The notes under the pieces were generated by a model. It had not been told where the DNA came from. It saw only the letters and a list, made by a program, of their open reading frames with translations, and did no database searches. DNA of 64,000 nucleotides. It comes from Mytilus trossulus (taxonomy: Eukaryota). The stretch is from NCBI RefSeq assembly GCF_036588685.1, contig NC_086382.1, positions 25,048,001 to 25,112,000 of the forward strand, in the 5' to 3' direction. Numbering within the stretch: the first letter of the stretch is position 1; every line of letters starts with the position of its first letter. The translations under genes were made by a program, and so were the position numbers. Below are positions 221 to 64,000 of this stretch, piece by piece.

Positions 221-1232
221 GAGACGAAACCAAATTTAAAATTATACGAAATTGCATTGATGTTTTTTTTTACTTTGTATGATGTTGTCATCTGTGCTGC
301 TGACATTTGAATTTGTTATATTTTTTATGAAAGTAGCGACATATACAATGGTTGGACTAATTTTAAATTCATCACATGCCATGCAGTACATATCGACCAT
401 TTCTTTAGCATGGTTGTATTACAATAGATGTTTTGGTGGAATTAGTCAGATTTATAAGAACTTTAATAAAGCTGTTCAAACCATTCTATATAGGGTGAAC
501 GAACTTCGAGCGGACGAAATAACAAAACAAGAAATGAAAGACCATAAAAACAAAGCATTAAAAGTTAGCAATAAAAGTATGTCCAGAACAGAGAGGAGCA
601 TCGGTACTTATGATAGAGATCCTAAATTCAAGACAAAAGGCGTAGTTTTATTGTTTGATAAATTTGATAAACAATATACAACGAAACAGTTCTTCTTCAA
701 CATTTGTAAAAATATACCAGATGGACCTGGACCATACAGTAAACACTATGGTATAGCTCTGAGACAATTTTTCGTCATTTTCTTATTCTTACTGTTCGTG
801 ACGCTTGTTGTAATAGCTTTTGGTGATTCCTACAGCGTATCTTTTCCAAATCAGCTGTTAGCAACTCTGGCCGGCGGAGTGGTGCCCTGGATTCTTATGA
901 AAACTAATATATTATTCTCACAAGATGACCCGCCTGACGTAGATGAAATTTGTGAAAGATATTTTCACAAACAGAAAAATAGTGAAAGTGATTCAGAAGG
1001 ATTGTTTAATATGTTTAAGAAGACTTTTGACAACGAAATTGAAAAAGACAGCAAATGGTGGATCATAGGTGATATGGATGTGGCCGATGAATTGACTTTG
1101 GACGTAGAACCATCTGAGGCTGATTTACTTATATGGAAAGGGAGAGAATCAACGTGTACGAAAAAAAAACCAGTTGAGAATCCGACAGAAATTAAAGACG
1201 AAGATGAAGGGCTGATAAAAAAAGACCAATAG
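1..1232 (+). pseudogene. Multi-pass membrane protein paralogue A, 3' part of the large exon (5' end outside window); +1 frameshift in T9 run at 263-271
   Basis: Near-identical to 22948..24178. The upstream frame (codons from pos 2) encodes the same 15-aa repeats as copy B. A has T9 where B has T8 (ATG TTT TTT TTA), shifting into ORF 279..1232. Could be a homopolymer error rather than a true pseudogene. Confidence 0.75.
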
Positions 1233-21164: not shown

Positions 21165-24100
21165 ATTCTCAATCAAAAACAGAATGTACGCTGAAGTTTA
21201 AACAACCGAGACATGGTCAAAGGAACTTACATAAAACTGCCAAGTTACTAACAATAACATTCAGTTTAGACAACGCGACAGGGATACCACATTCTGTTAT
21301 TGAAGATAGCGATTTGTTTCAACCGTTACAATGGAAACGTGTCTCAGGAACTCATGGTAACGGGCTTCTGCAATTAATACCAATCTACGAAATGCTTTCG
21401 CTATCACTTCTTAGCTATGAAACTGAAGATTCGTTCATTGATTTACAATCTAAACCTACAGGTTGTATTACTAACCTGACAGATTTGGAATACGAAATGG
21501 TTTTTCGGCAGTTTTTGTTGAATTTTACAAAAGAATACGAGGAAATTTGTAACGAACATATAGAAAATATATCTGGAGAAGCAGAATTTTATTATGAATG
21601 TTGTCATTATGATTATAACGGGAAAATGCAGTGTAACCGTGTTTTGAAAAATAAATGGATGAGGGCTATACATTATTGCTCTTATATAGTGATTGCAATT
21701 GTGTCGTTGTATTGCCCCTTGTTGATTCCGCCGTCTTTGTATAATCCAAATTTTGGTCCGAAACAGTTTGTTCATTGTCTTAAAGACCATTGCACTTTTA
21801 CTGTAAGTATAACCCAAACAAACTGTTGGAAAGAAATATGTAAAAGATTTAATAGACTAATGAATATTGACAAAAAGTATGTACCATACTATAAATTTGA
21901 AAGTATGACCAAGTTTATAAAAAAAGTTAAAAACATGGACGCTGAAAAGGGGCATCAATTCAAATTGTTACAGGTGTATTTCAATGTCGATCCTTCCGAA
22001 ATTGTTGCCGAAAATGAAGTGCCGATAAGCCTAATTAGCGCATTACGTGATCTTTTGTTTGGATGCGGTATGGAAAATGATGAAGGTGTGAGAAATGGTA
22101 GTCAAACAAGCGAGGTGGAAAATGAGGAAAACCAGACATCTTGTTGCAACAAATTTGAAACAAAAATACAGACAGCATGTTGTCAAAACAGTAAGATGAA
22201 ACATCACGAAGGTGTGAAAGCATGTTGCCAAGCAAATATATTTGGTGCATGTGTTTACATTAATTACCCGTGGTACAAGTTATGGGGCTTTCTACTTTGA
22301 TTCGTTTTTGCAGTAGCTATATGCCTACCTTGGATCATACGTGTTTGTATATTTTATGTTTACGAATATGATATACGAGAATCAAGACACAAAGCAGCAG
22401 AAAGAAGAAACTTTCCTTTGCGTATAGAAAACAATTTAACCTATTACGGAACACCAATTCATGTTGTATTCATCTTGTCATATGCTCTGATGTGCTTTGG
22501 CTACTTATTTTTAGAACTAACCAGTGTAATTCTGTTCAAGAATATTACAAGTTTACTTCGGAAAATTCTAACAGAAATTTTTAGCGGTATGTGTAATCGG
22601 TCCAAGGGGAAAGTTATTCGGTGGTCCATTAAAGTATTGTTGAAACCCTTCACTGCATGTGGAATGTTTGGAGTAGTATTTGCAGTACCGTTCTGGATAT
22701 TAGCAGTACCTTTTACTTTCACCGTATCTGCATACTATTTATTTCCAACATTTTATATCACTATTAACTTTTTATGGGTATTTGTAAATATTTTTCGAAC
22801 GTGCAATTTGAAATCGGATAAAAGTTCCAAAAAAAAAGTGGATAAACACTGTTATTATAGATTTTTCAGTTTTCAAGATATCTGTTCTGACAATAGAGAG
22901 ACCACAACGTCTCACGAAGCAACAGATAATGTTGACCAAGACGAGACCATAACGTCTCACGAAGCAACAGATAATGTTGACCAAGACGAGAATACAACGT
23001 CTCATGAAGCAACAGATAATGTTGACCAAAACGAGATTACAGCGTATCATAGAGAAATAGATAATGTTGACCATGACGAGATTACAGCGTCTCATGGAGA
23101 AACAGATAATGTTGACCAAGACGAGAATACAGCATCTCATGGAGAAACAGATAATGTTGACCAACAAGAGACGAAACCAAATTTAAAATTATACGAAATT
23201 GTATTGATGTTTTTTTTACTTTGTATGATGTTGTCATCTGTGCTGCTGACATTTGAATTTGTTATATTTTTTATGAAAGTAGCGACATATACAATGGTTG
23301 GACTAATTTTAAATTCATCACATGCCATGCAGTACATATCGACCATTTCTTTAGCATGGTTGTATTACAATAGATGTTTTGGTGGAATTAGTCAGATTTA
23401 TAAGAACTTTAATAAAGCTGTTCAAACCATTCTATATAGGGTGAACGAACTTCGAGCGGACGAAATAACAAAACAAGAAATGAAAGACCATAAAAACAAA
23501 GCATTAAAAGTTAGCAATAAAAGTATGTCCAGAACAGAGAGGAGCATCGGTACTTATGATAGAGATCCTAAATTCAAGACAAAAGGCGTAGTTTTATTGT
23601 TTGATAAATTTCATAAACAATATACAACGAAACAGTTCTTCTTCAACATTTGTAAAAATATACCAGATGGACCTGGACCATACAGTAAACACTATGGTAT
23701 AGCTCTGAAACAATTTTGCGTAATTTTCTTATTCTTATTATTCGTGACGCTCGTTGTAATAGCTTTTGGTGATTCCTACAGCGTATCTTTTTCAAATCAG
23801 CTGTTTGCAACTCTGGCCGGCGGAGTTGTGCCCTGGATTCTTATGAAAACTAATATATTATTCTCACAAGATGACCCGCCTGACGTAGATGAAATTTGTG
23901 AAAGATATTTTCACAAACAGAAAAATAGTGAAAGTGATTCAGAAGGATTGTTTAATATGTTTAAGAAGACTTTTGACAACGAAATTGAAAAAGACAGCAA
24001 ATGGTGGATCATAGGTGATATGGATGTGGCCGATGAATTGACTTTGGACGTAGAACCATCTAAGGCTGATTTACTTATATGGAAAGGGAGAGAATCAACG

Positions 24101-24178
24101 TGTACGAAAAAAAAAACAGTTGAGAATCCGACAGAAATTAAAGACGAAGATGAAGGGCTGATAAAAAAAGACCAATAG
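21165..24178 (+). pseudogene. Paralogue B exon 2: uncharacterised ~9-10-TM membrane protein (1026 aa if intact); single in-frame TGA at 22298-22300
   Basis: T-run/CAG acceptor, with G|AT giving DSQSKTEC. ORFs 21314..22300 and 22418..24178 share one frame, and the gap translates to FVFAVAICLPWIIRV, homologous to paralogue C. Confidence 0.85.
22898..23167 (+). repeat. Coding minisatellite, 6 x 45 bp (15-aa acidic Thr/His unit)
   Basis: ETTTSHEATDNVDQD-like x6, in frame; absent from paralogue C. Confidence 0.93.
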
Positions 24179-35805: not shown

Positions 35806-38126
35806 TAAGATCAGCAGAAAAGGATGGAAGACATCTACAGTAATGTTTGGTAATATTCATTAGACGTGTCTCGGTACTTATACATCCCGTCGTTGTATTA
35901 TTGCGATATGGTACATTTTTGTATTATTATCTTTAATGTATGCCTCTATGCACTTTGTCTATATATGCGTTTTTGTTTTCTTTGTTGACATATTTGCCTG
36001 GTTTTAAAGTAAATAAAATTATAACATAATGTTGACTGCTGTATTCCTTTTTTGAAATATGTTCCTTATGTTTTCTTTATATTTTCGTAGTTTATCTGAA
36101 CGTCTTACGTATTTTTATTATCGTTAAGTTTCGGATTTCATATGTTCGTTTCTGACAACCGTGCATATGTATCATTGAATCAAATAATATATTAATTACT
36201 TGTTTATAACGTGTATTGTTTATTTTAGTATTGTGGCAGATGCATTCTTGTTATGATGTATTATAAGACACTTGTTAATGAATTCATATCAGCGTAGTTT
36301 AATATGATTAGTACGCATAAAATAATGATTACGTTGCAAAAAACAAAACAAAAATACATGTTATTATAGTATTTTCATTTCCACTGCAATGGTTACAATT
36401 ATTTTTATAATTTTTCGCATTTCTGAGGATTTTTGTTGAGTTTGTTTCTTTTATTTTTTAACTCTAATTAATGTCTTTTCTTTGTTCATTCTTTTTGTGG
36501 TACATTTTGTAGTTTAGGAAAAGGGGTAAGGATTGGGAGGGTATTATGTTCAAATTAGAGTTTTCTTACATTGTGATGGAAAAAAAACGAACGATCGTGA
36601 AGAGAGCATGTATTTTTCCGCGATAACAGTAAATTAAGTGTTTTTGTTTTATCCGATTAAACAGCAGTCTTTTCTTAATCAAACGAGGCATTTCGCACAT
36701 AAAACACTTTTTGAATATCTGAAAATAAAATAAAACAGGTTCAAATACACTGACGTCGGATAAATTACTGATGTTATCCACTGAAAGAAATGGAACAAAA
36801 GTTGGTTGTTTTAAAAACAAAACAGTCTCGGTCTTTTACTTCGCTGTACAATATAGAACAATGCGAAGTTTTGAATAGTGGGCTAGAAAACGGTCTGCTA
36901 GGAAGGGGCACTCGGATGCGTCTCACTCCTAGTGTCGCCCTTCAGCTCTAATAATAAATCAACTAATTACATATAATCATTGGTAGGTAAACGTCAAGTG
37001 GCAACTATTTCATGAATGTTCAGGCCAAAACTGCAATTATACATAAAGATTCGAAACGGTTCAAGAATTTAGCCTAACTTGGGTGTCTGAACACATCACT
37101 AGGCGACAATGGATAGTTACCAGGGAGAGGCGCGGTATCGCTGCAAATTATAAAACGTGCCTAGGCATATGTTTTTGGGTATTTGTTTTTAATTATGGTA
37201 TTTTTGCAGTTGCGTATTTTAGGGAGTATTTCTTTTAATCTTTTCTATTTGTGTGAAGGGGAAACTTATGTATTTGCCTTGGTATTTTCTTTAGGTTAGA
37301 TAATGCTAAGGTGTATTTCTTTTTTTTGGATGGATGGGCGTGTTGTTTCAGCACAATCGTTAATTTTTAGGTTATTTTCTTCTTCTGACAAGCCTACTTT
37401 GTAGAGTTACCCCCTTCACTCTGTTGGTATTATATTTTTGTTTTATTATCTTCGCCTCAGTTGACAATGGTTTTTTTTCGAGGTAACATACATGTAAAGG
37501 TACTGAATGTTCTATTATTTTTATCTTGATAACTATTGCAATTTATCGTGATATACTATGATAATTACTAGCTTTCATTGACATTTCTTTAAGATAACAG
37601 AAACAAAGATATTGTCTCGTGGACTAAACTTTTTTTCTTCAAATTTTATATATATTTTGTATGAAATGAGAAAAATACAGAAAAATTCCCCAACATTTCT
37701 TTATTAGAGTTTAGTCACTTGATACACTTTTGTGTTATCATTGTACCTTGTAGGTTTACATGTACACTTTCTGTTCTTCTGTTTGTATGTTATATGTTTT
37801 GCAATTATTTCTTTTGGTGACACAACACTCTACTAAGTACATTACACTACACTATCTCCTCATAATGTTTGTGGTGGATCCAGCAATGTTCATATATAGG
37901 GACGGACATAAGAGGGGACATGCTCCAGTCGTGATTCCCGAAATAATCAACCAATTGTTTTCCAACAAAAGGGAGGCTGGGGTTGAGGTGCCTGGCCCTC
38001 CTAGATCTGCCTTTGCATGTTACTCTTCTTCAATGTTTACTATCAAATTTTATTTAGTAGATTTAATAAAGGTTAACATTTTCACATATAAAACCTAAAA
38101 TGATACTACATAGTTCACGCCATAAA

Positions 38127-38368
38127 CTAGTTAACATAAAATTTAGCTCCGTTTCCAACTGAGGACCCTGCATCTATTGGACAACTCATCATGTCAATTT
38201 CATCTTGTTCAAATGTTGATGGATCTAAATGTCTAGTTGTAAATGTTGCAGTGTTGTTGACATTAACACGAACAAAGGTAGTTAGTTGAATGAAGTTCAT
38301 GGCCACAGGAAAGATCGTTGTCATGGAAGTAGAGAAATGTATAGAACTATCTTTCGCCATTTTGAAAC
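38127..38368 (-). CDS. Tandem VirK-like domain protein, exon 5 (last)
   Basis: ctattttcag acceptor, phase 1; FKMAKDSSIHFSTS...ATFTTRHLDPSTF...MSCPI...GAKFYVN*; AATAAA at 38049-38054. Confidence 0.85.
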
Positions 38369-38547
38369 CTGAAAATAGACGGGTTATTTACGGCACGATT
38401 GTAGTTTTCGTAAATGAGTGTTTTTATCTTTAGAATAAAGAAAACTAAAAAGATCCAGAACAACTGACATTTTCAGCTAAAGACAATTCTTTTAGATTGG
38501 ATTTCGTTTATGCCATTCTTTTTTTTTAAACCTGTTATAATAATATA

Positions 38548-39116
38548 AAGGTCCCTTTGTAGCCCCAACATATAGCAGTTTTACAAAATTGATAAAATGT
38601 AAAATTTTAGTTATTTATTGGAAAGTAGAATGCTTCTGTTACATATATATGGGCTGTTTTTGACAATACAAAGCACATATTGTGGAATAAGCATCAATAA
38701 GTCATGCTAAATTACTGAAATCTTCACAATTCTAGCATTTTAGTTAAATTTTAAACGGTTTCCGTCTTAAATGAAAGAGACCGCATTTCTGTTCATTCTT
38801 AATATTGAAATGTAAGTTGTATGTGATTATAACACATAACATATGTATTAAGGTTGAGGATGAACACGGATGCGGCCGCTTTCATTTTTGACAAAAAAAA
38901 CATCTGAAAAGTGACATATTTTGGCATATTTGATAGATTTTTCATGTTTGAGCTTGAATCGAAGCGTTATTAATACTAAACCAGTTAAAATCTTTCACAT
39001 AAACTGATTGAATCAACTGTAGTAGGCACTTAAGTGTTTAAAAAGTGTCCAAAATCATTCGTCAGATGAACCTGAAATTTGGGGCTAATATCGGTCCTTA
39101 CCGGACTGACTTCTTT
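38548..39116 (+). mobile_element. MITE, copy with eroded left TIR (intron 4 of the VirK-like gene)
   Basis: Colinear with 40486..41066. Confidence 0.8.
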
Positions 39117-39531
39117 CATTGAAACTTTGGTTTTGTTTGACTCTTGTAATATGATCATCACTTTGGTTATTATTTAGTTTTTTTCTGCTCGTTTTGAGTG
39201 CTCACAAAACTATTTTTTCAATAACATCAAGTGTGAAAATGTTTATTAATCCCTAATAGTTATGTTGTTTTGAAAGATTTGATGTCAGATTTTAGATTCA
39301 TTTATATTTTATTATTTTTGAGAAAGAAAACCCAAACAATTTGGTGCTAGGCGTGTACAGTTGGCTTTTTTCTAACTATGAACATGCATTTTGATACCAT
39401 GTATTGCATTGCTACATATGTAGGTTGTTATTTTTTTTCCAAGACATCCATCGAATTATATATTCAGACAATAAATATATGTTTGATGTCTTCTTTTCAA
39501 AGTTATTGTATAAACTTTGTTAAATTATTAC

Positions 39532-39701
39532 CTCTGATCGTGTCTCCTAATATGCCATGATAGCAGTTGCCTTGTCCCGCAGCACATTGACATTCTGTTA
39601 TATTTACAACCCATCCGACTTCCTCACCAGAAGTCAGCATCGTCTGGATTTCCGGAAATGACGTCAGTTGTCTTTGTTTTGCTTGATTCTTTACCCATAG
39701 G
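39532..39701 (-). CDS. Tandem VirK-like domain protein, exon 4 (not in ORF track)
   Basis: tctttacag acceptor and AG|GTAATA donor; LWVKNQAKQRQLTSFPEIQTMLTSGEEVGWVVNITECQCAAGQGNCYHGILGDTIR; phases 2/1 fit the neighbouring exons. Confidence 0.85.
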
Positions 39702-40485
39702 CTGTAAAGATTAAATGATAATGTTTAACTTTAGTCATGAACACCCGACCCGAAATATATAAAAGAACGTAAAACTACTTGAAAACGTAATCCATTATAG
39801 AAGGTAAAGTAAAATTATTCTTAAATTCGATTACGGCGAATTTTTGACCGAGGGAGTTGTTTTTTTTAGTTTTTCAATAAATCTGAAGTGATGTTATTAT
39901 GCTATATGTAATCACTGGCATGTTATCAATCATGTCAATTCCAAATTGTAATGCAAACAGTTCTTAGCGTATTTTCTAGATTTAATTTCATCAGAAACAC
40001 AAAATTAAAAGGCAAGGATGTAGATCATCACTGGAATAAATGAAAATATTATCACCTTAGATAAACTCAAACAATAGTTTTACCGATAGCAGGTCAACTT
40101 TGTTTGACATATTCCCAAAGAGACTCGTGTAATTGTCGACTTAATTTTAATATTTGTATTTATTTTTTTCTTCTTTCCCTGGAGGATGTACGTTACTCTG
40201 TTTAAAATAACAAGCTTTTAAAAAGACTATTATATATCAAAAGTTAATCAAAGAAACGAAAAAAGCAAAGAAAAACTATGGGTCAATGTGTTCGTTTTCG
40301 AAATATAAGCCATTTAAAACTTGGCGGGAAATAAATCTCTCTAGAATTTTTATATATTTAACATTGGCACCTTTTTTTTTGAAAAAAACGATTAATAAAA
40401 AGCAAGGATTTTATAAGATTTTCAAAGAAGATATTTTAAACTATGTTTAATCAAATAATGGAACGAAAAGTTGGGGTTAATGGGC

Positions 40486-41066
40486 AAAGGAGTAGGTCCG
40501 GTAAGAGCCCTTTTTGGCCCCAAAATATAGCAGTTTTACAAAATTGTTAAAATGGAAACTTTTATTTATTTATTGGATAGAAGAATGGTTCTGCTACATA
40601 AATATGGGCTGTTTTTGATAATACAATGCACATATATTTGGTACTAGCACCATTAAGTCATGCTTGATTACTAAAATCTTCTCAATTCCAGCATTTTAAT
40701 TAAATTCTAGACGGTTTCCGTGTGAAACGAAAGTGGCCGCATTCGTGTTCATCCAAAAAATTGAAATGGAAGTTGTATTTGGTGATAATACATAACATAT
40801 ATAAAGATTGAGGATGAACACGGATGCGGCCACTTTCATTTTTGACAAAAAAACATCTGAAAAGTGACATTTTTTCGCATGTTTGGTAGATTTTTCAGAT
40901 TTGAGCTTGAATCGGATCGTTTTAAATGACGAAATAAGTTAAAATCTTTCACAAAAGTTAATTGAATCAAATGAAATAAAAAAGTGTTTCAAAAGTGGTC
41001 AAAATCTTTCGTCAGATGAATTTGAAATTTGAGGCCAAAATCGGTCTTTACCGGACCTAATCCTTT
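40486..41066 (+). mobile_element. ~580-bp MITE (intron 3 of the VirK-like gene)
   Basis: TIR AAAGGAGTAGGTCCGGTAA / TTACCGGACCTAATCCTTT; internal inverted GTGGCCGCAT.CGTGTTCATCC pair. Confidence 0.85.
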
Positions 41067-41217
41067 GTTTAACATGGATAAAACCAGAGGATGCCGAATA
41101 TCTGTCAAAAATAAAAAAAAAAAATGTGGGTCGAACTTCCTTAAATAACATTTTTCTTAATTTGACAAGGTGTTTGTCTTTAATAACGCAAAATCTGCCA
41201 CAGAAAACTACTCTTAC

Positions 41218-41353
41218 CTTCCTTGTCCTTCTGTCCATTTACAATATGTTCCTGCTATGTTGTCTGTAATATTTATATATACTCCAGGTTGTGCCCAAAA
41301 CACCTTTGCAGTATCATTTACAATCCAAAATGTATGTATTTCTTTATTTAGAT
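41218..41353 (-). CDS. Tandem VirK-like domain protein, exon 3
   Basis: aatttag acceptor (weak) and AAG|GTAAGA donor; LNKEIHTFWIVNDTAKVFW...TYCKWTEGQG; phases 1/2 fit. Confidence 0.75.
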
Positions 41354-42492
41354 CTAAATTTAGATACATATTGTTATTAATTTTCTTTTCAAACACTATT
41401 TTCTCTGAATTTTTTTCGGAAAAAATCCTTATGATTTATTTTTGCATATGTTGTAACGAAATTAGATATAGAATCGATATTCTTACAATGACGATATTTC
41501 TGCAAATCAGCACAAGAAGATAGTTCATTCTGTGAGACTGTGAAATGTTGTCAACCAATGGAATTGATTGACTGCTAAATGTGGCCAACCAATGATTGAC
41601 GTAACATTGAACAATGTAATACACAGTCGCAGCTCAAGTATTTGGTGTTTGTGTTACTTCTTTAATAATCTGTTTTACAATTGCGAGAAAAAACACACTA
41701 AGAAAAAGTTTAAAAGAATTGATGTCCTACCAAAACTTTAACAGTTTTTCCATTGGTATTGTTGTTATGTTTTATTTCTTTTAAATTCATTGCAGATATT
41801 TGTTTTTTTCACTAATTTTTTGCATTGATTGTTAATCCCTAGACTCTTTGTGTTACTACATGTTTTGTTTGTTAAAAGGGTCAGGGGTAGATAATGAAAC
41901 ACAAAAGAAAAACACAAATATTGTGCAAATAACGTATGGATCATAAATTTATTATCATGAGAACCACTTCCATGATGTCTGTAAAATAATGTAAGAATTA
42001 TTACATTTTTTACGTCTACAAAGTCTGAATGGTTTTTAAATGTCTGGTTCAAATAAAGATATACTTTGTCTCTTACGATCAAAAGACTTTTGTATTGCTG
42101 TTCATGTTTGTATTTTATTTTTCAATTTGATTTTCGGTAAATCGGGTTTGTTTTAAGAACCGAGACACATTTCATATTTCCCAAGGAGCCTCATGAGCTA
42201 TTGTAAAAAATGAGAGACGTGAATAACATATAAGGATTGATTAATGAAAGGTGTTGAATACCAGTTTTACAATATGATGCTATTTCGAGGCGAGTCAGTT
42301 TTTCATATAGTGTAGGAAGCTGTAGAGCTCGGAAGAACTACCGATCTTCGGTAAGAAAACTGACAATCCTAGTCAAATAAGACTGGACTAGAGTACACCT
42401 GTCAGGTGATGATTTTAAACTCAAAACCTCAGTGTTGACATGCTGGCACAGTAATACGATTAATAAAAGGAAGAACTACAACTGATAATTAC

Positions 42493-42716
42493 CGTTTTGG
42501 TTGATGTAGTCTACGTTACTGAATATCAACTGTCCTGCATCCTCTACTGTATTTTTACTGGCACTGAAGTATTTGATTTCACCACCAAATACGGGAATGT
42601 CTTTAAATGGAGGTGAAGCGGATTGTAGACAACTCGATATGTTAAAAAAGTATCTCACTTGTGCGCCATTTTCTAGGTAAGAAACAAGCGAGTCGTAGGT
42701 TTGTACTGGAATTGAT
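42493..42716 (-). CDS. Tandem VirK-like domain protein, exon 2
   Basis: ttttttgtttag acceptor and CG|GTAATT donor; SIPVQTYDSLVSYLENGAQVRYFFNISSC...FGGEIKYF...LIFS. Confidence 0.85.
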
Positions 42717-43220
42717 CTAAACAAAAAAGTTATAGCATGTAGACAGATGTTTTAGAAATGAAATGAATCAAATCCTCCAATCATGTAACAGTTTACTGAA
42801 TTCGGTAAAGAATTACAACATGTACAACATGTGCTAAAATGGAGATTTTCTAGTAAACTTTTTGATGATCATGCAGTTCTTCGCATCAGGTTATTTACGT
42901 TTCATAGTCAACGCCCAAGAGTAAAAACGATCGACTTAAACGAAGTTGTTATACACAACCTGCCCAGTGCAATACATTCTGTAATATCTACGTTATTCAG
43001 AGATTTTAATCCTGTTTGTAATTTTTCCTTATCGGGATTCAACGAGTAAAGAGTATAAAAGTGCAATAATTTTCCTTTTTAATCGTTTTAGCGTACAGCA
43101 ACTGATTGTACGCAATGGTTTTTCATAACGAAGTAAATTCCAACAAACATTAATTTATTGCTATACAAAATCATTCAATGACATCATGATAAAAAATGAA
43201 AGACGTTTAAAAGAACTCAC

Positions 43221-43318
43221 CGTTGATTATCTGAAATCAAGAACGAAGATATAAGACAAATATTAAGACAAAACAGGTAAACTATGGAATTAGCCATTAT
43301 GACATCAGACTTCTTCAT
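43221..43318 (-). CDS. Tandem VirK-like domain protein, exon 1 (signal peptide/anchor)
   Basis: MKKSDVIMANSIVYLFCLNICLISSFLISDNQR; CG|GTGAGT donor, phase 2; five exons sum to 870 nt = 289 aa + stop. Confidence 0.8.
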
Positions 43319-43374
43319 ATTTCCGTCAAGAAAATTCTTCGAGTGATAACTTTGATGCAATGTTACCTAAAGAA

Positions 43375-43457
43375 CTGATAACCTATTTATATAACAACAT
43401 AAGACCTTGTGTTAACCACGTGGTCAAGGTCATATCATACGATATGTACAAAGTCCA
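43375..43457 (-). promoter_or_regulatory. Candidate proximal promoter of the VirK-like gene
   Basis: TATAAATA (minus strand, ~43385-43392), TGATAA 43375-43380, CACGTG 43417-43422, TCAAGGTCA 43424-43432, CAAAGTCCA 43449-43457. Confidence 0.5.
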
Positions 43458-43628
43458 AAGTACTTGCAGACATTCCATACTTTAAAACGTTTCCGTGAAT
43501 GTGAGATGGATTGGTCATTATGAGAAATTCAGTTTTCTTTGGTGAATTAACGTTTGTCTTTAGTTCATAACCAGCATTCAATAAGGAAGGTCAATTCAAT
43601 TATTGGGGAAATGGGGAGGGGTATATCT

Positions 43629-54107: not shown

Positions 54108-54145
54108 ATTGAAATGTTGTTTTCAATTTTTCAAACTCTTTTTAG

Positions 54146-56816
54146 ATTCCAAGAAAAAAACAGAATGTCAGTTGATGTTGAAACAAACCAAAGATGGTCA
54201 GAAGAACTTGTCACGAACTGCTGAGTTGCTGACAATAACATTTATCTTATCCAACTCAACCCACCTCCCCCATTCCGTTGTTAAAGATACCATTTTATTT
54301 CAACCCCTGCAATGGAAGCGTATCTCGGGAACTCACGGAAAAGGACTTTTGCAATTGAAACCAGTCTACGAAATGCTTTCTTTGTCACTTTTGAGCTTTA
54401 AAACAGAAGAAACACGTATAGAATTACTGACCGAACCACTAGGCTGTGTAGGGAACCTGACAGAATTGGAATACGAATATATTTTTCGGGATTTTTTGCT
54501 GAACTTTTCAAAAGAAAACGATGAAATATGTAACGAACATGTCGGAAATATATCTGGATATGCAAGCTTTTATCATGAATGTTGTCATTATGATCACCAT
54601 GAAAGCATGAAGTGTGACCGAGTTTTAAAGAACAAATGGATGCAAGCTATACACTACTGCACTTACATTGTGATGATTATTGTAGTATTGTATTGTCCTC
54701 TTCTGGTCCCATCATCGCTGTATAAACGGAATTATGGTTCCAAAAAATTTGAACATTGTCTAGAAGATTCCATCGTTTTGATTGTCAAAACAGCAGACTC
54801 CACCACGTCTAGCTATTGGACGAAAATACGAGAAAGAATTTGTAAACAAAAGGATAATGGAACCACCATAGTTCCATACGCTAGATTTAAAGGTATGACA
54901 AACTTTAAAAAAATGCTTAAAGATTTGGATAAAGAAGACAAGTATGAGGTTACGGTGTCCAAAATATATTTCCGTGTTCGGGATGAAGAACTTTTGGCCG
55001 CAAATGAAGTTCCAAACAGTGTATTCAAAGTATTATATGATTTGTTATTTAAATGCAATATAAGAAAGCAGGATTTCGTTTCTACCTGTTGTAAAGCAAG
55101 TGTTTGTGGTACTCATTGGCCACATGGTATCACGTATCCATGGTACAAGTTATTGCGCTTTCTTCTCCACTTTATTTTATCAGTGGCTGTATGTTTACCT
55201 TGGATTATACGAGTTTATTTTTTCTACGCTTACGAAAATGAGATACGGGAATCAAGACTTCAAGCAGCAGAATCGAGAAGTTTGCTAGTGCGTATAGAAA
55301 ACAACTTAACCTATTATGGAACACCATTACATGTTATATTCATTATATGTTATGCTTTCATGTGCTTTGGTTATATTTTTCTTGAACTGACCAGTGTCGT
55401 ATTATTCAAAAATATCCAGTGTGTAGTACGCGATATTTTAACGAAATGTTTTGACGGTATGTGTGATCGGTCAAAGCAAGAAGTTTTTCAGAATTGTATC
55501 AAATTTTTATTGAAACCTTGCAAAGCATTTGGAATTTTTGGGATGTTACTTTCCATCCCATACTGGATATGTATGGTTCCTTTAGTATTTGCCTTGAATG
55601 CTTATTATTTTTTCCCGACAGTATACATAGCATTAAATTTTTTATGCTTATTCCCGCATGCTTTTCGAAGGTGTTTCTGTAGCTCATATATCCCCAAGAA
55701 AAAACAAGAAAATTCAGACGATGAAGCCGACGAAAAAAAATCTATTTGGTCCAATTTACCATTCAACACAACAAAAACATATTCAAACATGGACATTGGT
55801 TTGATGTTTATTTTACTCTGTTTAATGTTATCATCTCTTCTTTGACAGTTGAACTTATAATCTTCCTGATTAGGGTAGCAATCTATACAATGGTGGGAGT
55901 AATTCTCAATTCATCACACGCCATGCAATACATATCGACAATTTCATTAGCGTGGTTGTACTACCGCAGATGCTTTGGTGGAATCAGTCAGATTTATAAA
56001 GACTATAATAAAGCTGTTCACAAAATTCTATATAGAGTAAATAAACGAAAGCTGGTTGAAATAGCCAAAAAGGATACAAAGAATCAAGAGCACACAGCGT
56101 TCAAAGTTAGTGTTGATGGGTCAAGGAAAATATGTGTTGATAATGTGAAGGATAAGTTAAACACAAAAAAGAACAACTCTTGTAGCAAATGCTGCTATCA
56201 AGTTGATGACAGAGAGATTAAGAAAAAGATAATTGATACCTCAGATGGAGCTCCAAAAATAAAAACAAACGGTATCATTTTATTGTTAGACAGGTTTGAT
56301 AAACAATATATTACGAAGAAATTCTTCTTCAAAGTTTGCAAGATAAAACCGGAAGGACCAGGACCATTGAGTAAACACTTCGGAACAGCTCTAAGGCGAT
56401 TCGGAATGATTTTCATTTTTTTAGTATTTGTGACGCTAGTCGTCTTAGCGTTTGGAGATTCCTACAGTCTTACGTTTTCAAATCAGTTGTTAGCGACGCT
56501 AGCTGGAGGAGTAGTACCATGGATTCTAATGAAATTCAATATTTTATTTACTGCAGCTGACCACACAGATACAGATGAACTAGAGGAGAGATATTTCAGC
56601 GAACAAAAAACATTTGAACTTACTGATGACAGTGAAGTAAGTGTGAAGGGAGCATTCAAGAAGAAATTAAATGAAAAAATCAGAGAGGATGAAAAATGGT
56701 GGACCATTGCTGACATGGATATGAAATGTAAACCAACTAAATTATTGAAGGATGACAAATGTGATTTAGTTGTTGGTATTTTGAAAAACAATAATGACAA
56801 GTACACTGCGGTATGA
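54146..56816 (+). pseudogene. Paralogue C exon 2 (911 aa if intact); -1 frameshift at T-run 55841-55843
   Basis: ctctttttag acceptor gives DSKKKTEC. ORFs 54109..55845 and 55746..56816 are the two halves of the B homologue: CTT CTT TG ACA in C vs GTG CTG CTG ACA in B. May be a sequencing error. Confidence 0.8.
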
Positions 56817-62361: not shown

Positions 62362-64000
62362 TCATTCGATTGCAAACAAAAAGGCTTCATTGAATCGATT
62401 TGCAACCAACAATTTATTGGTAGATTTGTCATAATGTAGAGCCCATAGCAATCTCAGTCCATCTTCACTTGATAAGAGTTGTCTGTAGTGTTGTCCATCA
62501 GGAGAAATAACGACCACATTGTTAGAATCAAATCCTGCTACATACACGTTACCATCATTGTCTACAGATATACTTAATGGAGACATCAGAACATTTCTAT
62601 CACAGAACGTCCACAGTGTGTTACCATGGTAATCACAACAGGTTACACTGTGATTTCTATAATGTGTGTAGTACAGTTTGTCACCTAATGCTGCAACGTA
62701 CGCAAAATCTGGAAGTTGGGTTTTGCTAACATTGGTAATTGTTTCATCATTCAGACTGATCATCTGTATTCCTTTTTCTTGGGCACAATAAATCAAATGT
62801 CCATCTTTGTATACTAGTCCAGAATTATATGAATTCACTGTTATTGATTTCTTCAGTTTGTGCTTCTTTAAGTCGATTATATTAATCTGATTTGAACAGC
62901 CAGAAGTTACAGCAATAGAATCATCACCACTAAATACCACATTAAAAGTGGGACCGATTTTCTTTATTTGAAAATCTTTCGATCCGTCAGACTTGAGCAC
63001 TTTTATCTTTTGTTGGCTAGAACTCGAGAATACCATCTTATCGCCAGGAAGCAGTGAACAACTATGAACATTTGACAACCCTGTATTGATACGTTTCTGT
63101 AATTTCAGAGTTAGGTTATCAATATTTCTGGTTGGAAAAGCTATCATAATCTGAGCTTGTCTATCCTTCCTTTTCTGAATGGAAAAATCACATGGATCAG
63201 AACTGACATTAATTTCCCCAAACTTCTGTACGATGGCAGATATTTGCTGCAAAGACTTGTTAATCTGGAATGAAATATTGACTTGATTTGTGGATCCACT
63301 TGTGGTAATCAATTGAATAAATTTTTCTTCGGTTGAAATATCTTTTTCGATATTTTTCATGGTTAAAAACGTTTGAAGGTCAGGCGCATGCTTTTTAATA
63401 CTAGCAATGTTTTCTTGTACCTCAATGATATCTGATTCCTTCTTTTTCAGAGTAGTCAATAATTTTTCTATTTTTCTATTTTCTTGTTGTTCAACTCTCA
63501 CTAGTTCGTTAATCAAGTCATCTTGGAGTTTATCAAGGTGATGATTTATATGTACCCTGCTTTGTTTTATTTCGGCTTCAATTTCTCTCTTCTTATTTTC
63601 TAGCAATGTTAAATTTTCTCTCCTGTTAGTGTGGAGTTGTTTAATATTCTGGACGACTTCCAGCAGGGTCTGTTCGAATTCGTAAAAAGCGTTTGAAGTT
63701 TTGATGTTCTTTACGAGTACATTTATGTCCGTTAAACTTTTACAGTCGGTGTGAGAATTCTCACATTTCTGACAGCATGGACAATCGTGGTCTCTACAGA
63801 AAAGTTTGAATTTCTCATTATGAAGTTTGCAGGTCTGGGCGATGTGTATGACTTCGGTCGGTAATGTTTTGTATTCGGCGATAAAAACGGTTTCATGGCT
63901 TTTTGACGCCTTGGAATCAGAGTTATGATTTTCGCGCTCTTTATCAAGTCCTTCATCACATTCCGAACACCATACTACTGAATGTTCATTAATCTGAAGA
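62362..64000 (-). CDS. TRIM-like B-box / coiled-coil / NHL-like beta-propeller protein; start lies beyond the window
   Basis: The frame is open from 63999 to the stop. WCSECDEGL (B-box1), CKLH..FCRDHDCPCCQKC..H..C (B-box2), coiled coil, and propeller motifs PLSISVDNDGNVYV and VVVISPDG. Confidence 0.88.
   Translation of the reverse strand, partial: LQINEHSVVWCSECDEGLDKERENHNSDSKASKSHETVFIAEYKTLPTEVIHIAQTCKLHNEKFKLFCRDHDCPCCQKCENSHTDCKSLTDINVLVKNIKTSNAFYEFEQTLLEVVQNIKQLHTNRRENLTLLENKKREIEAEIKQSRVHINHHLDKLQDDLINELVRVEQQENRKIEKLLTTLKKKESDIIEVQENIASIKKHAPDLQTFLTMKNIEKDISTEEKFIQLITTSGSTNQVNISFQINKSLQQISAIVQKFGEINVSSDPCDFSIQKRKDRQAQIMIAFPTRNIDNLTLKLQKRINTGLSNVHSCSLLPGDKMVFSSSSQQKIKVLKSDGSKDFQIKKIGPTFNVVFSGDDSIAVTSGCSNQINIIDLKKHKLKKSITVNSYNSGLVYKDGHLIYCAQEKGIQMISLNDETITNVSKTQLPDFAYVAALGDKLYYTHYRNHSVTCCDYHGNTLWTFCDRNVLMSPLSISVDNDGNVYVAGFDSNNVVVISPDGQHYRQLLSSEDGLRLLWALHYDKSTNKLLVANRFNEAFLFAIE

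What the first reader, a model, noticed from the sequence alone, without database searches (positions are those of the whole stretch)
38127..43318. Spliced animal gene encoding a secreted protein built from two VirK-like (bacterial-type) domains
Seen: five GT-AG exons with matching phases (2,1,2,1) give an uninterrupted 289-aa protein with a hydrophobic N-terminus, TATA box and polyA signal. It has two internal repeats, VQTYDSLVSYLENGAQVRYFFNISSC..GGEIKYF..LIFS..YCKW..G and LTSFPEIQTMLTSGEEVGWVVNITEC..GDTIRGF..IHFS..SCPI..G.KF. It also has five N-x-S/T sequons. Established: bacterial VirK-family proteins (Agrobacterium Ti plasmid, Xanthomonas, Legionella) are small exported proteins of unknown function. 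I recall their pattern as L..Y..L..AL..G..V....D...C ... GG..I..F ... FS ... C.I..G..F. Inference: this is a duplicated, glycosylated, intron-containing VirK-fold protein in a mollusc, from either old horizontal transfer or patchy retention. It may be an undescribed secreted or lysosomal host-microbe or digestive factor. The ORF track misses exons 1 and 4 entirely.
Basis: partly seen in the sequence, partly recalled or inferred. Interest (0 to 1): 0.85.

Follow-up and report, generated by a model that had tools for sequence, protein, structure and literature searches.

The report
Mussel gene with doubled VirK domain
This is a real, spliced and transcribed mussel gene for a secreted protein made of two copies of the VirK module, a fold otherwise described only in small exported proteins of host-associated bacteria; its function is unknown in both bacteria and bivalves.

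Summary
Five GT-AG exons on the minus strand (43318-38127) give an open 289-aa frame with intron phases 2,1,2,1. It has one N-terminal hydrophobic signal-like segment, five N-x-S/T sequons, a TATA-like box and poly(A) signals. Spliced contigs from four runs in four studies carry all four junctions exactly.

The VirK reading also holds. The Mytilus edulis orthologue P0024 (87% identical, same junctions) scores 34.1 bits on Pfam VirK PF06903, above the 23.7-bit cut-off. Its AlphaFold model matches Legionella VirK/NttG (5XTA) at Z 11.2, rmsd 2.1 Å, with 117 of 120 residues aligned.

The N half is a diverged copy of the C half (hhalign 96.9%). Both cysteines of the module are invariant in all 32 bivalve and bacterial domains aligned.

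The two-domain family turned up only in oysters and mussels, always as "uncharacterized protein". This genome holds three intact copies plus relics. I found no paper on animal VirK.

Origin is unresolved: old bacterial transfer is likelier than patchy retention. Function is inferred only: a secreted, glycosylated, non-enzymatic binding protein.

Exons were searched singly and P0024 served as proxy.

The parts
43388..43393 (-). TATA-like box (TATAAA within TATAAATA), 75 nt upstream of the ATG
   Evidence: The furthest 5' reach of the spliced contigs is 43348, about 40 nt downstream of the box.
43221..43318 (-). Exon 1, coding part (98 nt). It holds the start codon and a hydrophobic signal-peptide-like segment (residues about 11-30). 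The 5' UTR extends to at least 43348.
   Evidence: The junction 43221/42716 appears in contigs of X2, X5 and X7 (joints table) and X1 (contig pieces).
42717..43220 (-). Intron 1 (GT..AG, phase 2)
   Evidence: a joint that skips 504 bases, ends CT..AC on the + strand.
42493..42716 (-). Exon 2 (224 nt): first 74 residues of the N-terminal VirK-like domain, with the L..G helix, first Cys, FGG turn and IFS strand
   Evidence: 107 bits on the bivalve N-half profile; 15.6 bits on the C-half profile. Paralogous exons are 55% identical.
41354..42492 (-). Intron 2 (GT..AG, phase 1)
   Evidence: a joint that skips 1139 bases, in all 4 runs.
41218..41353 (-). Exon 3 (136 nt): rest of the N-terminal domain, with two sequons and the second Cys (C145)
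39702..41217 (-). Intron 3 (GT..AG, phase 2). It contains one copy of an abundant interspersed repeat (40503-41066).
39532..39701 (-). Exon 4 (170 nt): linker plus the first part of the C-terminal VirK domain (Pfam profile positions 2-33)
   Evidence: PF06903, 15.4 bits, E 0.02. (18.8 bits on a profile of 8 bacterial VirK proteins, HMM positions 23-59).
38369..39531 (-). Intron 4 (GT..AG, phase 1). It contains the second copy of the interspersed repeat (38548-39116).
38127..38368 (-). Exon 5, coding part (242 nt including the TAG stop): rest of the C-terminal VirK domain with the invariant N-N-T sequon, the C-P-I motif and the terminal F
   Evidence: 10.4 bits on the bacterial VirK profile, positions 74-142, colinear with exon 4. 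It is 89% identical to P0024 residues 204-282.
38049..38067 (-). Poly(A) signals ATTAAA (38067-38062) and AATAAA (38054-38049) in the 3' UTR
   Evidence: Contigs cover the 3' UTR down to 38096. The true 3' end cannot be read from contigs.

Best explanation
This is a functional bivalve gene (Mytilus-like genome).

SHOWN:
- It is transcribed from a TATA-type promoter and spliced at four GT-AG introns.
- It encodes a 289-aa protein with an N-terminal hydrophobic export signal and two tandem modules of about 120 aa.
- The C-terminal module is a complete VirK (PF06903) fold, like Legionella NttG/Lpg1832.
- The N-terminal module is a faster-evolving internal duplicate of it.
- Each module keeps the family's invariant cysteine pair (C62/C145 and C190/C272 in the window's numbering). 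The second module has an extra pair (C192/C199).
- The gene belongs to a small, locally duplicated family in this genome. The family is shared by oysters and mussels.
- The listed sequence differences suggest purifying selection.

INFERRED:
- The protein enters the ER, loses its signal peptide, forms one disulfide per module, is N-glycosylated and is secreted.
- The residues shared with bacterial VirK are only Gly, Cys, Leu and Phe, with no conserved nucleophile or acid/base set. It therefore most likely acts by binding an extracellular partner rather than by catalysis, with the tandem modules giving two binding surfaces.
- Its domain most likely reached an ancestor of oysters and mussels by old horizontal transfer from a VirK-bearing bacterium. 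Host-type base composition, intron gain and duplication of a phase-2/phase-2 cassette would have followed.

My confidence in each step: real expressed gene about 0.97; VirK homology about 0.9; secreted glycoprotein about 0.8; HGT origin about 0.6; non-enzymatic binding role at a host-microbe or digestive surface about 0.3.
For: Gene and transcript. There is a unique open splice solution. All four junctions appear in spliced contigs of 4 runs from 4 studies, one of them recorded as gut metatranscriptome RNA, and unique intron stretches have zero depth. No intronless copy exists in the genome.

Orthology. The exons map colinearly onto M. edulis P0024 at 1-25/27-100/102-145/147-202/204-282, one split codon apart each time, with 87% identity.

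VirK.
- P0024 scores 34.1 bits on PF06903 over profile positions 2-96 of 98; the cut-off is 23.7.
- Four of the other full-length homologues score 29-35 bits.
- The window's exon 4 scores 15.4 bits.
- Exons 4 and 5 are colinear on a bacterial VirK profile.
- hhalign of the C halves against 8 bacterial VirK proteins gives 95.3%, E 2.3e-8, over 113 columns.
- In a PDB profile search the top hit is 5xta 'VirK protein' over the full domain, E 0.096.
- The AF2 model has pLDDT 78 and pTM 0.77.
- The only significant Foldseek hit is 5xta_A: E 2.3e-6, target TM 0.81.
- VIA-align gives Z 11.2, rmsd 2.1 Å, 117 of 120 residues; the next hit has Z 3.0.

Duplication. hhalign of N half against C half gives 96.9%. 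N domains form one clade (100/98) and the same subfamilies recur in both halves.

Invariant signature. L, G, C, G, F and C are conserved across 32 domains.

Constraint. Of 19 listed exonic differences, 11 are synonymous and 8 are not; 79% nonsynonymous would be expected at random.

Family range. Named members are all Ostrea, Crassostrea/Magallana, Saccostrea or Mytilus.

Base composition. Exons are 37% GC, introns 30% and the window 33%, so the gene has host composition.

Bacterial VirK. It is an exported T2SS substrate of unknown function (PMC5700972, PMC6617341). It was found in 5 of 401 evenly sampled genomes of the Agrobacterium phylum, including the seed genome.
Against: - The window's own protein was tested only exon by exon. 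No single exon reaches the Pfam cut-off.
- The N-terminal module has no direct significant link to bacterial VirK (hhalign 6%). A model of exon 2 alone gave only Z 4.2 to 5xta.
- Signal-peptide cleavage, disulfides and glycosylation are predicted, not observed.
- No donor lineage emerged. The sampled bacteria form their own clade (96/93), separate from the bivalve domains.
- The one exhaustive search used the N-domain profile, which is the half least like bacterial VirK. VirK-like proteins in other eukaryotes could have been missed.
- A separate VirK-like ORF on another contig (L001) shows the fold's history in this genome is not a single simple event.
- Lack of conserved catalytic-type residues is weak evidence against an enzyme.
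- The tissue of expression is unknown, apart from presence in gut metatranscriptome libraries.
Confidence: 0.8

Rival explanations
1. Vertical descent with patchy retention. The VirK fold would be ancient, present in early animals or eukaryotes, and lost almost everywhere except in pteriomorph bivalves. No bacterium-to-animal transfer took place.
For: - Identity to bacterial VirK is only about 20-23%.
- The sampled bacterial sequences form a clade apart from the bivalve domains instead of enclosing them.
- The gene has introns, host base composition and an old internal duplication.
- A second, unrelated-looking VirK-like ORF exists on contig C6.
- My search for eukaryotic VirK was indirect.
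Against: - An exhaustive HMMER scan of 1.84 billion representative proteins with the N-domain profile found 18 hits at E<=1e-10. Those that carry a name are all oysters or mussels.
- The literature describes PF06903 only in bacteria (PMC554113, PMC5700972, PMC6617341).
- This scenario requires very many independent losses.
Confidence: 0.3
2. Artefact. The VirK-like sequence would be bacterial contamination or a mis-assembly, and the exon model a chance product of AT-rich DNA.
For: None beyond the bacterial affinity of the domain.
Against: - There are four canonical introns, two of which carry a repeat that is very abundant in the four runs laid.
- Spliced transcripts are present in four studies.
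- The contig is 78 Mb long.
- Orthologues with the same junctions lie on large (up to about 98 Mb) contigs of other bivalve assemblies.
- Synonymous differences are in excess.
Confidence: 0.01
3. The similarity to VirK is convergent or spurious. The protein would belong to some other animal beta-rich fold.
For: The PDB sequence-profile hit is weak (E 0.096). The N-terminal half gives no direct VirK signal.
Against: - Four independent lines point to VirK and to nothing else: Pfam above its cut-off in several homologues, hhalign at 95.3%, Foldseek and VIA-align with a large gap to the next hit, and the language-model nearest clusters being bacterial VirK (a lead only).
- The cysteine pair and the Gly/Phe signature sit in the same columns.
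Confidence: 0.04
4. The protein is an enzyme, for example a hydrolase acting on food or microbial polymers in the gut lumen or lysosome, and not a binding module.
For: It is a secreted-type protein. Its mRNA is present in gut metatranscriptome libraries. Bacterial VirK is co-secreted with degradative enzymes (PMC5700972).
Against: No polar catalytic-type residue is conserved between the bivalve and bacterial domains; the invariant columns are L, G, C, G, F and C. No structural similarity to any enzyme fold was found. No activity is known for any VirK protein (PMC6617341, PMC5700972).
Confidence: 0.12

Closest known systems
Bacterial VirK family, Pfam PF06903 (e.g. Agrobacterium fabrum pTiC58 VirK, ATU_RS23755; Xanthomonas citri XAC0435)
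   Same: Same domain. The orthologue passes the Pfam cut-off. The L..G helix, the GG turn, the F-S/A strand and both cysteines are shared. Both have an N-terminal export signal and both are exported proteins of unknown function (PMC5700972).
   Different: The bacterial proteins are single-domain, about 145 aa, intronless, and exported by Sec/T2SS. The mussel protein is a tandem two-domain protein of 289 aa, encoded by five exons, with conserved N-glycosylation sequons and an extra cysteine pair. Identity is only about 20-23%.
Legionella pneumophila NttG / Lpg1832 (PDB 5XTA), the only solved VirK structure
   Same: The fold of the C-terminal module matches: VIA-align Z 11.2, rmsd 2.1 Å, 117 of 120 residues; Foldseek target TM 0.81.
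   Different: It is a type II secretion substrate of an intracellular pathogen of amoebae, with a single domain and 20% identity. Its activity is also undefined (PMC6617341).
Bivalve 'uncharacterized proteins' with an automatic PF06903 tag (M. edulis unnamed protein P0024; M. californianus LOC127724898/9; Ostrea edulis LOC125648488; Crassostrea virginica LOC111105219; Magallana gigas LOC117681295; Saccostrea echinata LOC133191559)
   Same: These are true orthologues and paralogues. They share the two-domain architecture and the signal peptide; P0024 also shares the window's exon junctions.
   Different: None in kind. The window's gene is one more member. None of these has a published description that I could find.
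VirK/YbjX family (DUF535) of Shigella, Salmonella, Klebsiella and Vibrio
   Same: Only the name.
   Different: It is an unrelated family described as membrane-associated (PMC12562796, PMC13109725). It is listed here to prevent confusion, because most 'VirK' literature hits concern it.

Membership tests
VirK (Pfam PF06903) | Score on the Pfam HMM at or above the gathering cut-off (23.7 bits) | tested here: inconclusive
   For the window's own sequence, searched exon by exon as required, only exon 4 hits (15.4 bits, profile positions 2-33). An intron splits the domain. The 87%-identical orthologue P0024 scores 34.1 bits over positions 2-96 of 98. P0002, P0005, P0009, P0010, P0025, P0026 and P0027 score 29-35 bits.
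VirK (Pfam PF06903) | VirK fold as in the solved structure 5XTA | tested here: met
   AF2 model of P0024: the C-terminal module 155-281 aligns with 5xta_A 1-120 at Z 11.2, rmsd 2.1 Å; Foldseek E 2.3e-6; the next hit has Z 3.0. This was tested on the orthologue, not on the joined window protein.
VirK (Pfam PF06903) | Conserved sequence signature: L..G helix, first Cys, GG turn, F-S/A strand, second Cys near the C-terminus | tested here: met
   L, G, C, G, F and C are invariant or nearly so across 12 N halves, 12 C halves and 8 bacterial VirK proteins. The window has these residues in both halves.
VirK (Pfam PF06903) | N-terminal export signal; exported protein | tested here: met
   There is a single hydrophobic segment at residues about 11-30 and none elsewhere. 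All full-length homologues start the same way. Export itself is not testable here.
VirK (Pfam PF06903) | Single-domain architecture of about 145 aa in bacteria | tested here: not met
   The protein has 289 aa and two tandem modules, and is encoded by five exons in an animal genome. It is therefore a variant architecture, not a typical member.
VirK (Pfam PF06903), N-terminal module specifically | Direct similarity of the N-terminal module to bacterial VirK | tested here: inconclusive
   hhalign of the N halves against bacterial VirK gives 6%, E 0.006, but in the right register. The model of exon 2 alone against 5xta gives Z 4.2, rmsd 4.9 Å, colinear. The link is indirect, through N half against C half at 96.9%.
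Horizontally acquired gene (bacterium to bivalve) | Animal sequences nested within a bacterial clade, and the domain absent from other eukaryotes | tested here: inconclusive
   With 8 bacterial sequences the bacteria form their own clade (96/93) and no nesting is seen. The family was found only in oysters and mussels, but other eukaryotes were not searched with a VirK profile.

The most novel reading that the evidence does not exclude
A bacterial type-II-secreted, virulence-associated module (VirK) was captured by an ancestor of oysters and mussels. It then gained introns, was duplicated into a tandem two-module secreted glycoprotein, and is now used by the animal at a mucosal or digestive surface. 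One possible role is to bind the same class of target that bacterial VirK proteins bind, acting as a competitor or sensor. If so, the bivalve proteins would be the first animal members of the family. They would also offer a tractable eukaryotic handle on a domain whose function has never been determined in plant pathogens or Legionella.
Probability: 0.3. Interest if true: 0.7.

Novelty: new variant of a known kind. Interest (0 to 1): 0.5.

Why it matters
VirK (PF06903) is a well-known unknown. It is induced with the Agrobacterium vir regulon, strongly secreted by Xanthomonas during infection, and is a type II secretion substrate in Legionella, yet it has no assigned activity (PMC5700972, PMC6617341).

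Showing that oysters and mussels carry expressed, constrained, intron-bearing tandem versions of the same fold does three things. It extends the family to animals. It adds a likely case of old bacterium-to-bivalve gene capture followed by domain duplication. It also provides a second, independent biological setting in which the module's ligand could be sought.

For genome annotation, it gives a name and a domain model to a set of 'uncharacterized' bivalve genes. It also flags that several current models are truncated or chimeric, such as the M. californianus fragments and Magallana gigas K1QTH4.

Tried and rejected
- NCBIfam on the single exons gave nothing relevant.
- Pfam on exons 1, 2, 3 and 5 gave no hit, because the domains are split by introns.
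- tblastn of P0024 against 72,556 plasmids gave only chance-level rows with E >= 2. Agrobacterium virK was therefore fetched through its annotation instead.
- The large bacterial repeat proteins in the representative search have many short stretches. They include a VCBS-domain protein, a Planctomycetota hypothetical protein and an unnamed 673-aa repeat protein. I take them as composition-driven repeat matches, not relatives.
- The C6 VirK-like ORF (L001) found no database protein in its length range and is single-copy.
- A model of exon 2 alone, the only by-reference way to fold the window's N-terminal module, had pLDDT 67. It gave no significant Foldseek hit and only Z 4.2 to 5xta, so it is inconclusive.
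- The FEBS Letters paper on the 5XTA structure is not held.
- One genome search failed because 'of' needs a G handle; this was corrected.
- I did not attempt to infer a donor.
- The joined 289-aa model was translated only inside local scripts, to check the frame, sequons and codon effects.

Full report
OBSERVATION

Exactly one combination gives an uninterrupted frame. The exons are 43318-43221, 42716-42493, 41353-41218, 39701-39532 and 38368-38127. Their lengths are 98, 224, 136, 170 and 242 nt. All introns are GT..AG with pyrimidine-rich acceptors, and the phases are 2,1,2,1. The product has 289 aa.

My first try was off by one base per exon and gave stops, which shows the frame is not trivially open.

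The protein has one hydrophobic segment (residues about 11-30) and five sequons (N58, N120, N135, N186, N247). It has eight cysteines: two in the signal segment and six in the mature part. A TATA-like hexamer lies 75 nt before the ATG, and ATTAAA/AATAAA lie 59 and 72 nt after the stop. Exons are 37% GC, introns 30% and the window 33%.

TRANSCRIPTION AND SPLICING

A run search returned 15 runs from 5 studies, each holding about a tenth of the sampled words. I laid four runs from four studies on 38000-43500.

All four junctions appear as joints with CT..AC ends on the + strand. These are 38366>39530 (cut +2), 39701>41218, 41353>42493 and 42716>43221. Three of them stand in the joints table for all four runs. 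The 42716>43221 joint is listed there for X2, X5 and X7, and for X1 it shows in the table of contig pieces.

One 809-nt contig in X2 runs through exons 5, 4, 3 and 2, and the joints table shows it reaching 41 letters into exon 1. In all four runs, depth is zero in the unique intron bins and non-zero over every exon.

Three runs are only guessed to be RNA. X7 is on record as metatranscriptomic RNA from an invertebrate gut.

Exon-wise searches of the whole 1.3-Gb assembly find each exon only at intron-containing loci, so there is no intronless DNA copy that could mimic the joined form.

These are contigs, so the strand, the transcript ends and the expression level cannot be read from them.

Of the 19 exonic differences listed between the contigs and the window, 11 are synonymous and 8 are not. 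At random, 79% would be nonsynonymous, so the listed sample is consistent with purifying selection. It is a partial sample: 56 further differences were not shown.

HOW THE PROTEIN WAS SEARCHED

The joined 289-aa sequence therefore went to no search, family or fold tool. I translated it only in local scripts to check the frame and its features.

The in-frame exon references were:
- 43223-43318
- 42494-42715
- 41220-41351
- 39533-39700
- 38130-38366

As a full-length proxy I used a database protein found with the exons. P0024 is an 'unnamed protein product' of Mytilus edulis, 282 aa long. The five exons map onto it colinearly at residues 1-25, 27-100, 102-145, 147-202 and 204-282. Each gap is exactly one residue, the split codon. 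Identity is 247 of 285 residues, or 87% (BLASTP 85% and 89% for exons 2 and 5). P0024 therefore uses the same junctions.

IS IT VIRK?

Evidence from the window's own exons:
- On Pfam, only exon 4 hits, and it hits VirK PF06903 (15.4 bits, E 0.02, profile positions 2-33 of 98). An intron splits the domain.
- On a profile I built from eight bacterial VirK proteins, exon 4 scores 18.8 bits (positions 23-59) and exon 5 scores 10.4 bits (positions 74-142). The two are colinear and together span the mature bacterial protein.

Evidence from the full-length homologues:
- P0024 scores 34.1 bits over profile positions 2-96 of 98, against a curated cut-off of 23.7.
- Seven further oyster homologues score 29-35 bits.
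- A profile of eight homologues finds 5xta 'VirK protein' as the top PDB sequence hit, over the full domain, but weakly (E 0.096).
- hhalign of the C-terminal halves against the bacterial alignment gives 95.3%, E 2.3e-8, over 113 columns.

Evidence from structure:
- An AlphaFold2 model of P0024, made with a 12-sequence alignment, has pLDDT 78 and pTM 0.77.
- Foldseek against the PDB gives a single significant hit: 5xta_A (Legionella lpg1832), E 2.3e-6, target-normalised TM 0.81.
- VIA-align gives Z 11.2, rmsd 2.1 Å, with 117 of 120 residues aligned (model 155-281). The next entry is at Z 3.0.
- The protein-atlas look-up also puts bacterial VirK clusters nearest, with a score of 0.85. This is a lead only.

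THE TWO HALVES

Across the family, N halves and C halves align at hhalign probability 96.9%, E 1.6e-10, over 105 columns. On the window itself, exon 2 scores 15.6 bits on the C-half profile and exon 4 scores 19.8 bits on the N-half profile.

In a joint alignment of 12 N halves, 12 C halves and 8 bacterial proteins, the invariant or near-invariant columns are L, G, C, G, F, (G), F and C. Both cysteines are present in all 32 sequences. In the window's numbering the pairs are C62/C145 and C190/C272, with an extra C192/C199 in the second module.

The N half has no direct significant link to bacterial VirK (hhalign 6%). Folding exon 2 alone gave a modest model and only Z 4.2 to 5xta, although it was colinear from residue 1. 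The N module is best called a diverged duplicate of a VirK domain.

In a maximum-likelihood tree:
- The N halves form one clade (100/98) on a long branch.
- The bacteria form one clade (96/93).
- The same subfamilies recur within both halves.

The duplication therefore predates the divergence of the family's subfamilies.

Exons 2+3 total 360 nt and are flanked by two phase-2 introns. This would allow an in-frame cassette duplication. The introns inside the two modules lie at different domain positions (about 76-80 and about 50-52), so they are probably independent gains. Both points are my inference.

FAMILY AND DISTRIBUTION

I searched a profile of the three exon-2 paralogues against 1.84 billion representative proteins. 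It gave 23 hits at E <= 0.001, of which 18 had E <= 1e-10.

Every hit that carries a name is from Ostrea edulis, Crassostrea/Magallana (gigas, angulata, virginica), Saccostrea echinata or Mytilus (edulis, californianus). All are 'uncharacterized', and the full-length ones found by the word-based searches carry a precomputed PF06903 tag. The remainder are unnamed metagenome or Logan fragments. The four or five large bacterial repeat proteins in the list are composition-driven matches.

In this genome the family comprises:
- the window's gene;
- two tandem paralogues about 220 kb away on the same contig, at C10:25306472-25309344 and 25310698-25315320, where exons 2 to 5 were found by similarity;
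- a degraded fragment near C10:25259569-25260509, with a stop and a frame break;
- an isolated exon-4-like piece with a TGA on C11.

An earlier first-stage note of this scan (s1-829906) describes the tandem pair. I had found them independently.

A separate single-copy VirK-like open frame on C6 (L001) scores 27.4 bits on Pfam. It resembles the bacterial profile (hhalign 91%) more than the bivalve family. No database protein matched it in the length range searched.

PF06903 was found in 5 of 401 evenly sampled genomes of the phylum that holds Agrobacterium, counting the seed genome, so it is patchy in bacteria too.

WHAT IS KNOWN

- Pfam VirK was described as restricted to plant-associated Proteobacteria (PMC554113).
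- In Xanthomonas it is a signal-peptide-bearing, T2SS-secreted protein induced in planta, 'no known function to date' (PMC5700972).
- In Legionella it is the T2SS substrate NttG/Lpg1832, with 'activity and role of infection undefined'. Its only non-Legionella homologue at the time was in aquatic Francisella halioticida (PMC6617341).
- The Shigella/Klebsiella/Vibrio 'VirK/YbjX' family is unrelated.

Full-text searches found no paper on an animal VirK-domain gene. I searched for VirK together with bivalve terms, Crassostrea, Mytilus, HGT and metazoa, and for the oyster gene identifiers. The search covers open-access text only.

Horizontal acquisition of structural genes by bivalves has a precedent (PMC10691215).

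MECHANISM

Shown: a constrained, spliced mRNA that encodes a protein with a signal-like N-terminus and two VirK-type modules.

Inferred from general cell biology:
- import into the ER and cleavage of the signal peptide near the conserved Q-K/R motif that precedes the first module;
- one disulfide per module at the invariant cysteines;
- N-glycosylation, since the sequons at N135 and N247 are invariant in the 12-sequence alignment (N128/T130 and N240/T242 in P0024 numbering);
- secretion, since there is no second hydrophobic segment and no retention-type C-terminus.

The conserved columns are structural residues only, and no enzyme fold is matched. I therefore favour a non-catalytic binding role, bivalent through the tandem modules, at an extracellular host-microbe or digestive interface. 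This fits the extracellular life of bacterial VirK, the locally duplicating family and the presence of the mRNA in gut metatranscriptome libraries. It remains a low-confidence inference (about 0.3).

ORIGIN

I put old transfer from bacteria at about 0.6 and patchy retention at about 0.3.
- For transfer: the very narrow animal range, and the otherwise bacterial family.
- Against: the low identity, the lack of nesting in my small bacterial sample, the indirect search of other eukaryotes, and the extra C6 locus.

Contamination is excluded by the introns, the repeats inside the introns, the spliced transcripts and the orthologues in several large assemblies.

VERDICT

The gene is one member of an unpublished but database-visible bivalve family, and is a new architectural and taxonomic variant of the VirK family.

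Interest is moderate. A specialist in VirK/T2SS effectors or in bivalve HGT would find it notable. However, the function is still unknown, and the genes are already annotated, without a name, in related species.

- The single representative search, the three homologue searches, the single run search and the single read-laying run were all spent.

Noticed in passing
window 38548-39116 and 40503-41066: Two copies of an interspersed repeat of about 570 nt, 84-88% identical and in the same orientation, lie in introns 4 and 3. Contig depth over them reaches hundreds to tens of thousands in all four runs, against about 5-40 over the exons. This points to a very abundant, transcribed element (SINE- or MITE-like). 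It also explains much of the 'share of words' by which the runs were found.
   Followed up: partly
L001 = G000:C6:51126085-51129342; open frame at L001:1477-1899 (-): This is a separate, single-copy VirK-like open frame of 141-151 aa with no in-frame ATG before the domain, a plausible acceptor and a terminal stop. It scores 27.4 bits on PF06903, over the cut-off. It matches a bacterial VirK profile (hhalign 91%) better than the bivalve two-domain family (56-68%). No database protein matched it in the length range searched. It could be a second VirK-derived gene or a relic.
   Followed up: partly
G000:C10:25306472-25309344 and 25310698-25315320 (L014, L016): Two tandem paralogues on the same strand, in which exons 2 to 5 were found by similarity. 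Identity to the window's exons is 53-55% (exon 2), 36-39% (exon 3) and 33-34% (exon 5).
   Followed up: yes
G000:C10 about 25259569-25260509 (L015) and G000:C11:44723253-44723438 (L005): Degraded family relics. On C10 there is an exon-4-like piece (87% identical over 16 aa) and an exon-5-like piece with a stop and a frame break. On C11 there is an isolated exon-4-like open frame with a TGA inside the match. I describe them only and did not repair them.
   Followed up: partly
P0010 (Magallana gigas K1QTH4), P0004 and P0032 (Mytilus californianus LOC127724898/9): These public gene models of family members look faulty. P0010 joins the back of one paralogue to the front of the next. P0004 skips parts of the exons. 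P0032 starts inside exon 3.
   Followed up: partly
window 279-1232, 21314-24178, 54109-56816 (+): Three related sets of long open frames (317-586 aa), hydrophobic in many segments and apparently multi-pass membrane proteins. One copy has an acidic tandem repeat of about 13 aa (T-S-H-E-A-T-D-N-V-D-Q-D-E) around 22.9-23.2 kb. They look like a tandemly duplicated gene family flanking the VirK-like gene.
   Followed up: no
window 62362-63606 (-): A 414-aa intronless open frame with a coiled-coil-like front half and a repeat-rich back half that looks like a beta-propeller (NHL-type by eye). It resembles the TRIM-like genes that are expanded in bivalves. I did not test it.
   Followed up: no
window 38190-38282 (exon 5): Six of the eight nonsynonymous differences between the transcript contigs and the window fall in residues 239-269 of the C-terminal module. 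The rest of the listed differences are mostly synonymous. This may mark a variable surface patch.
   Followed up: partly
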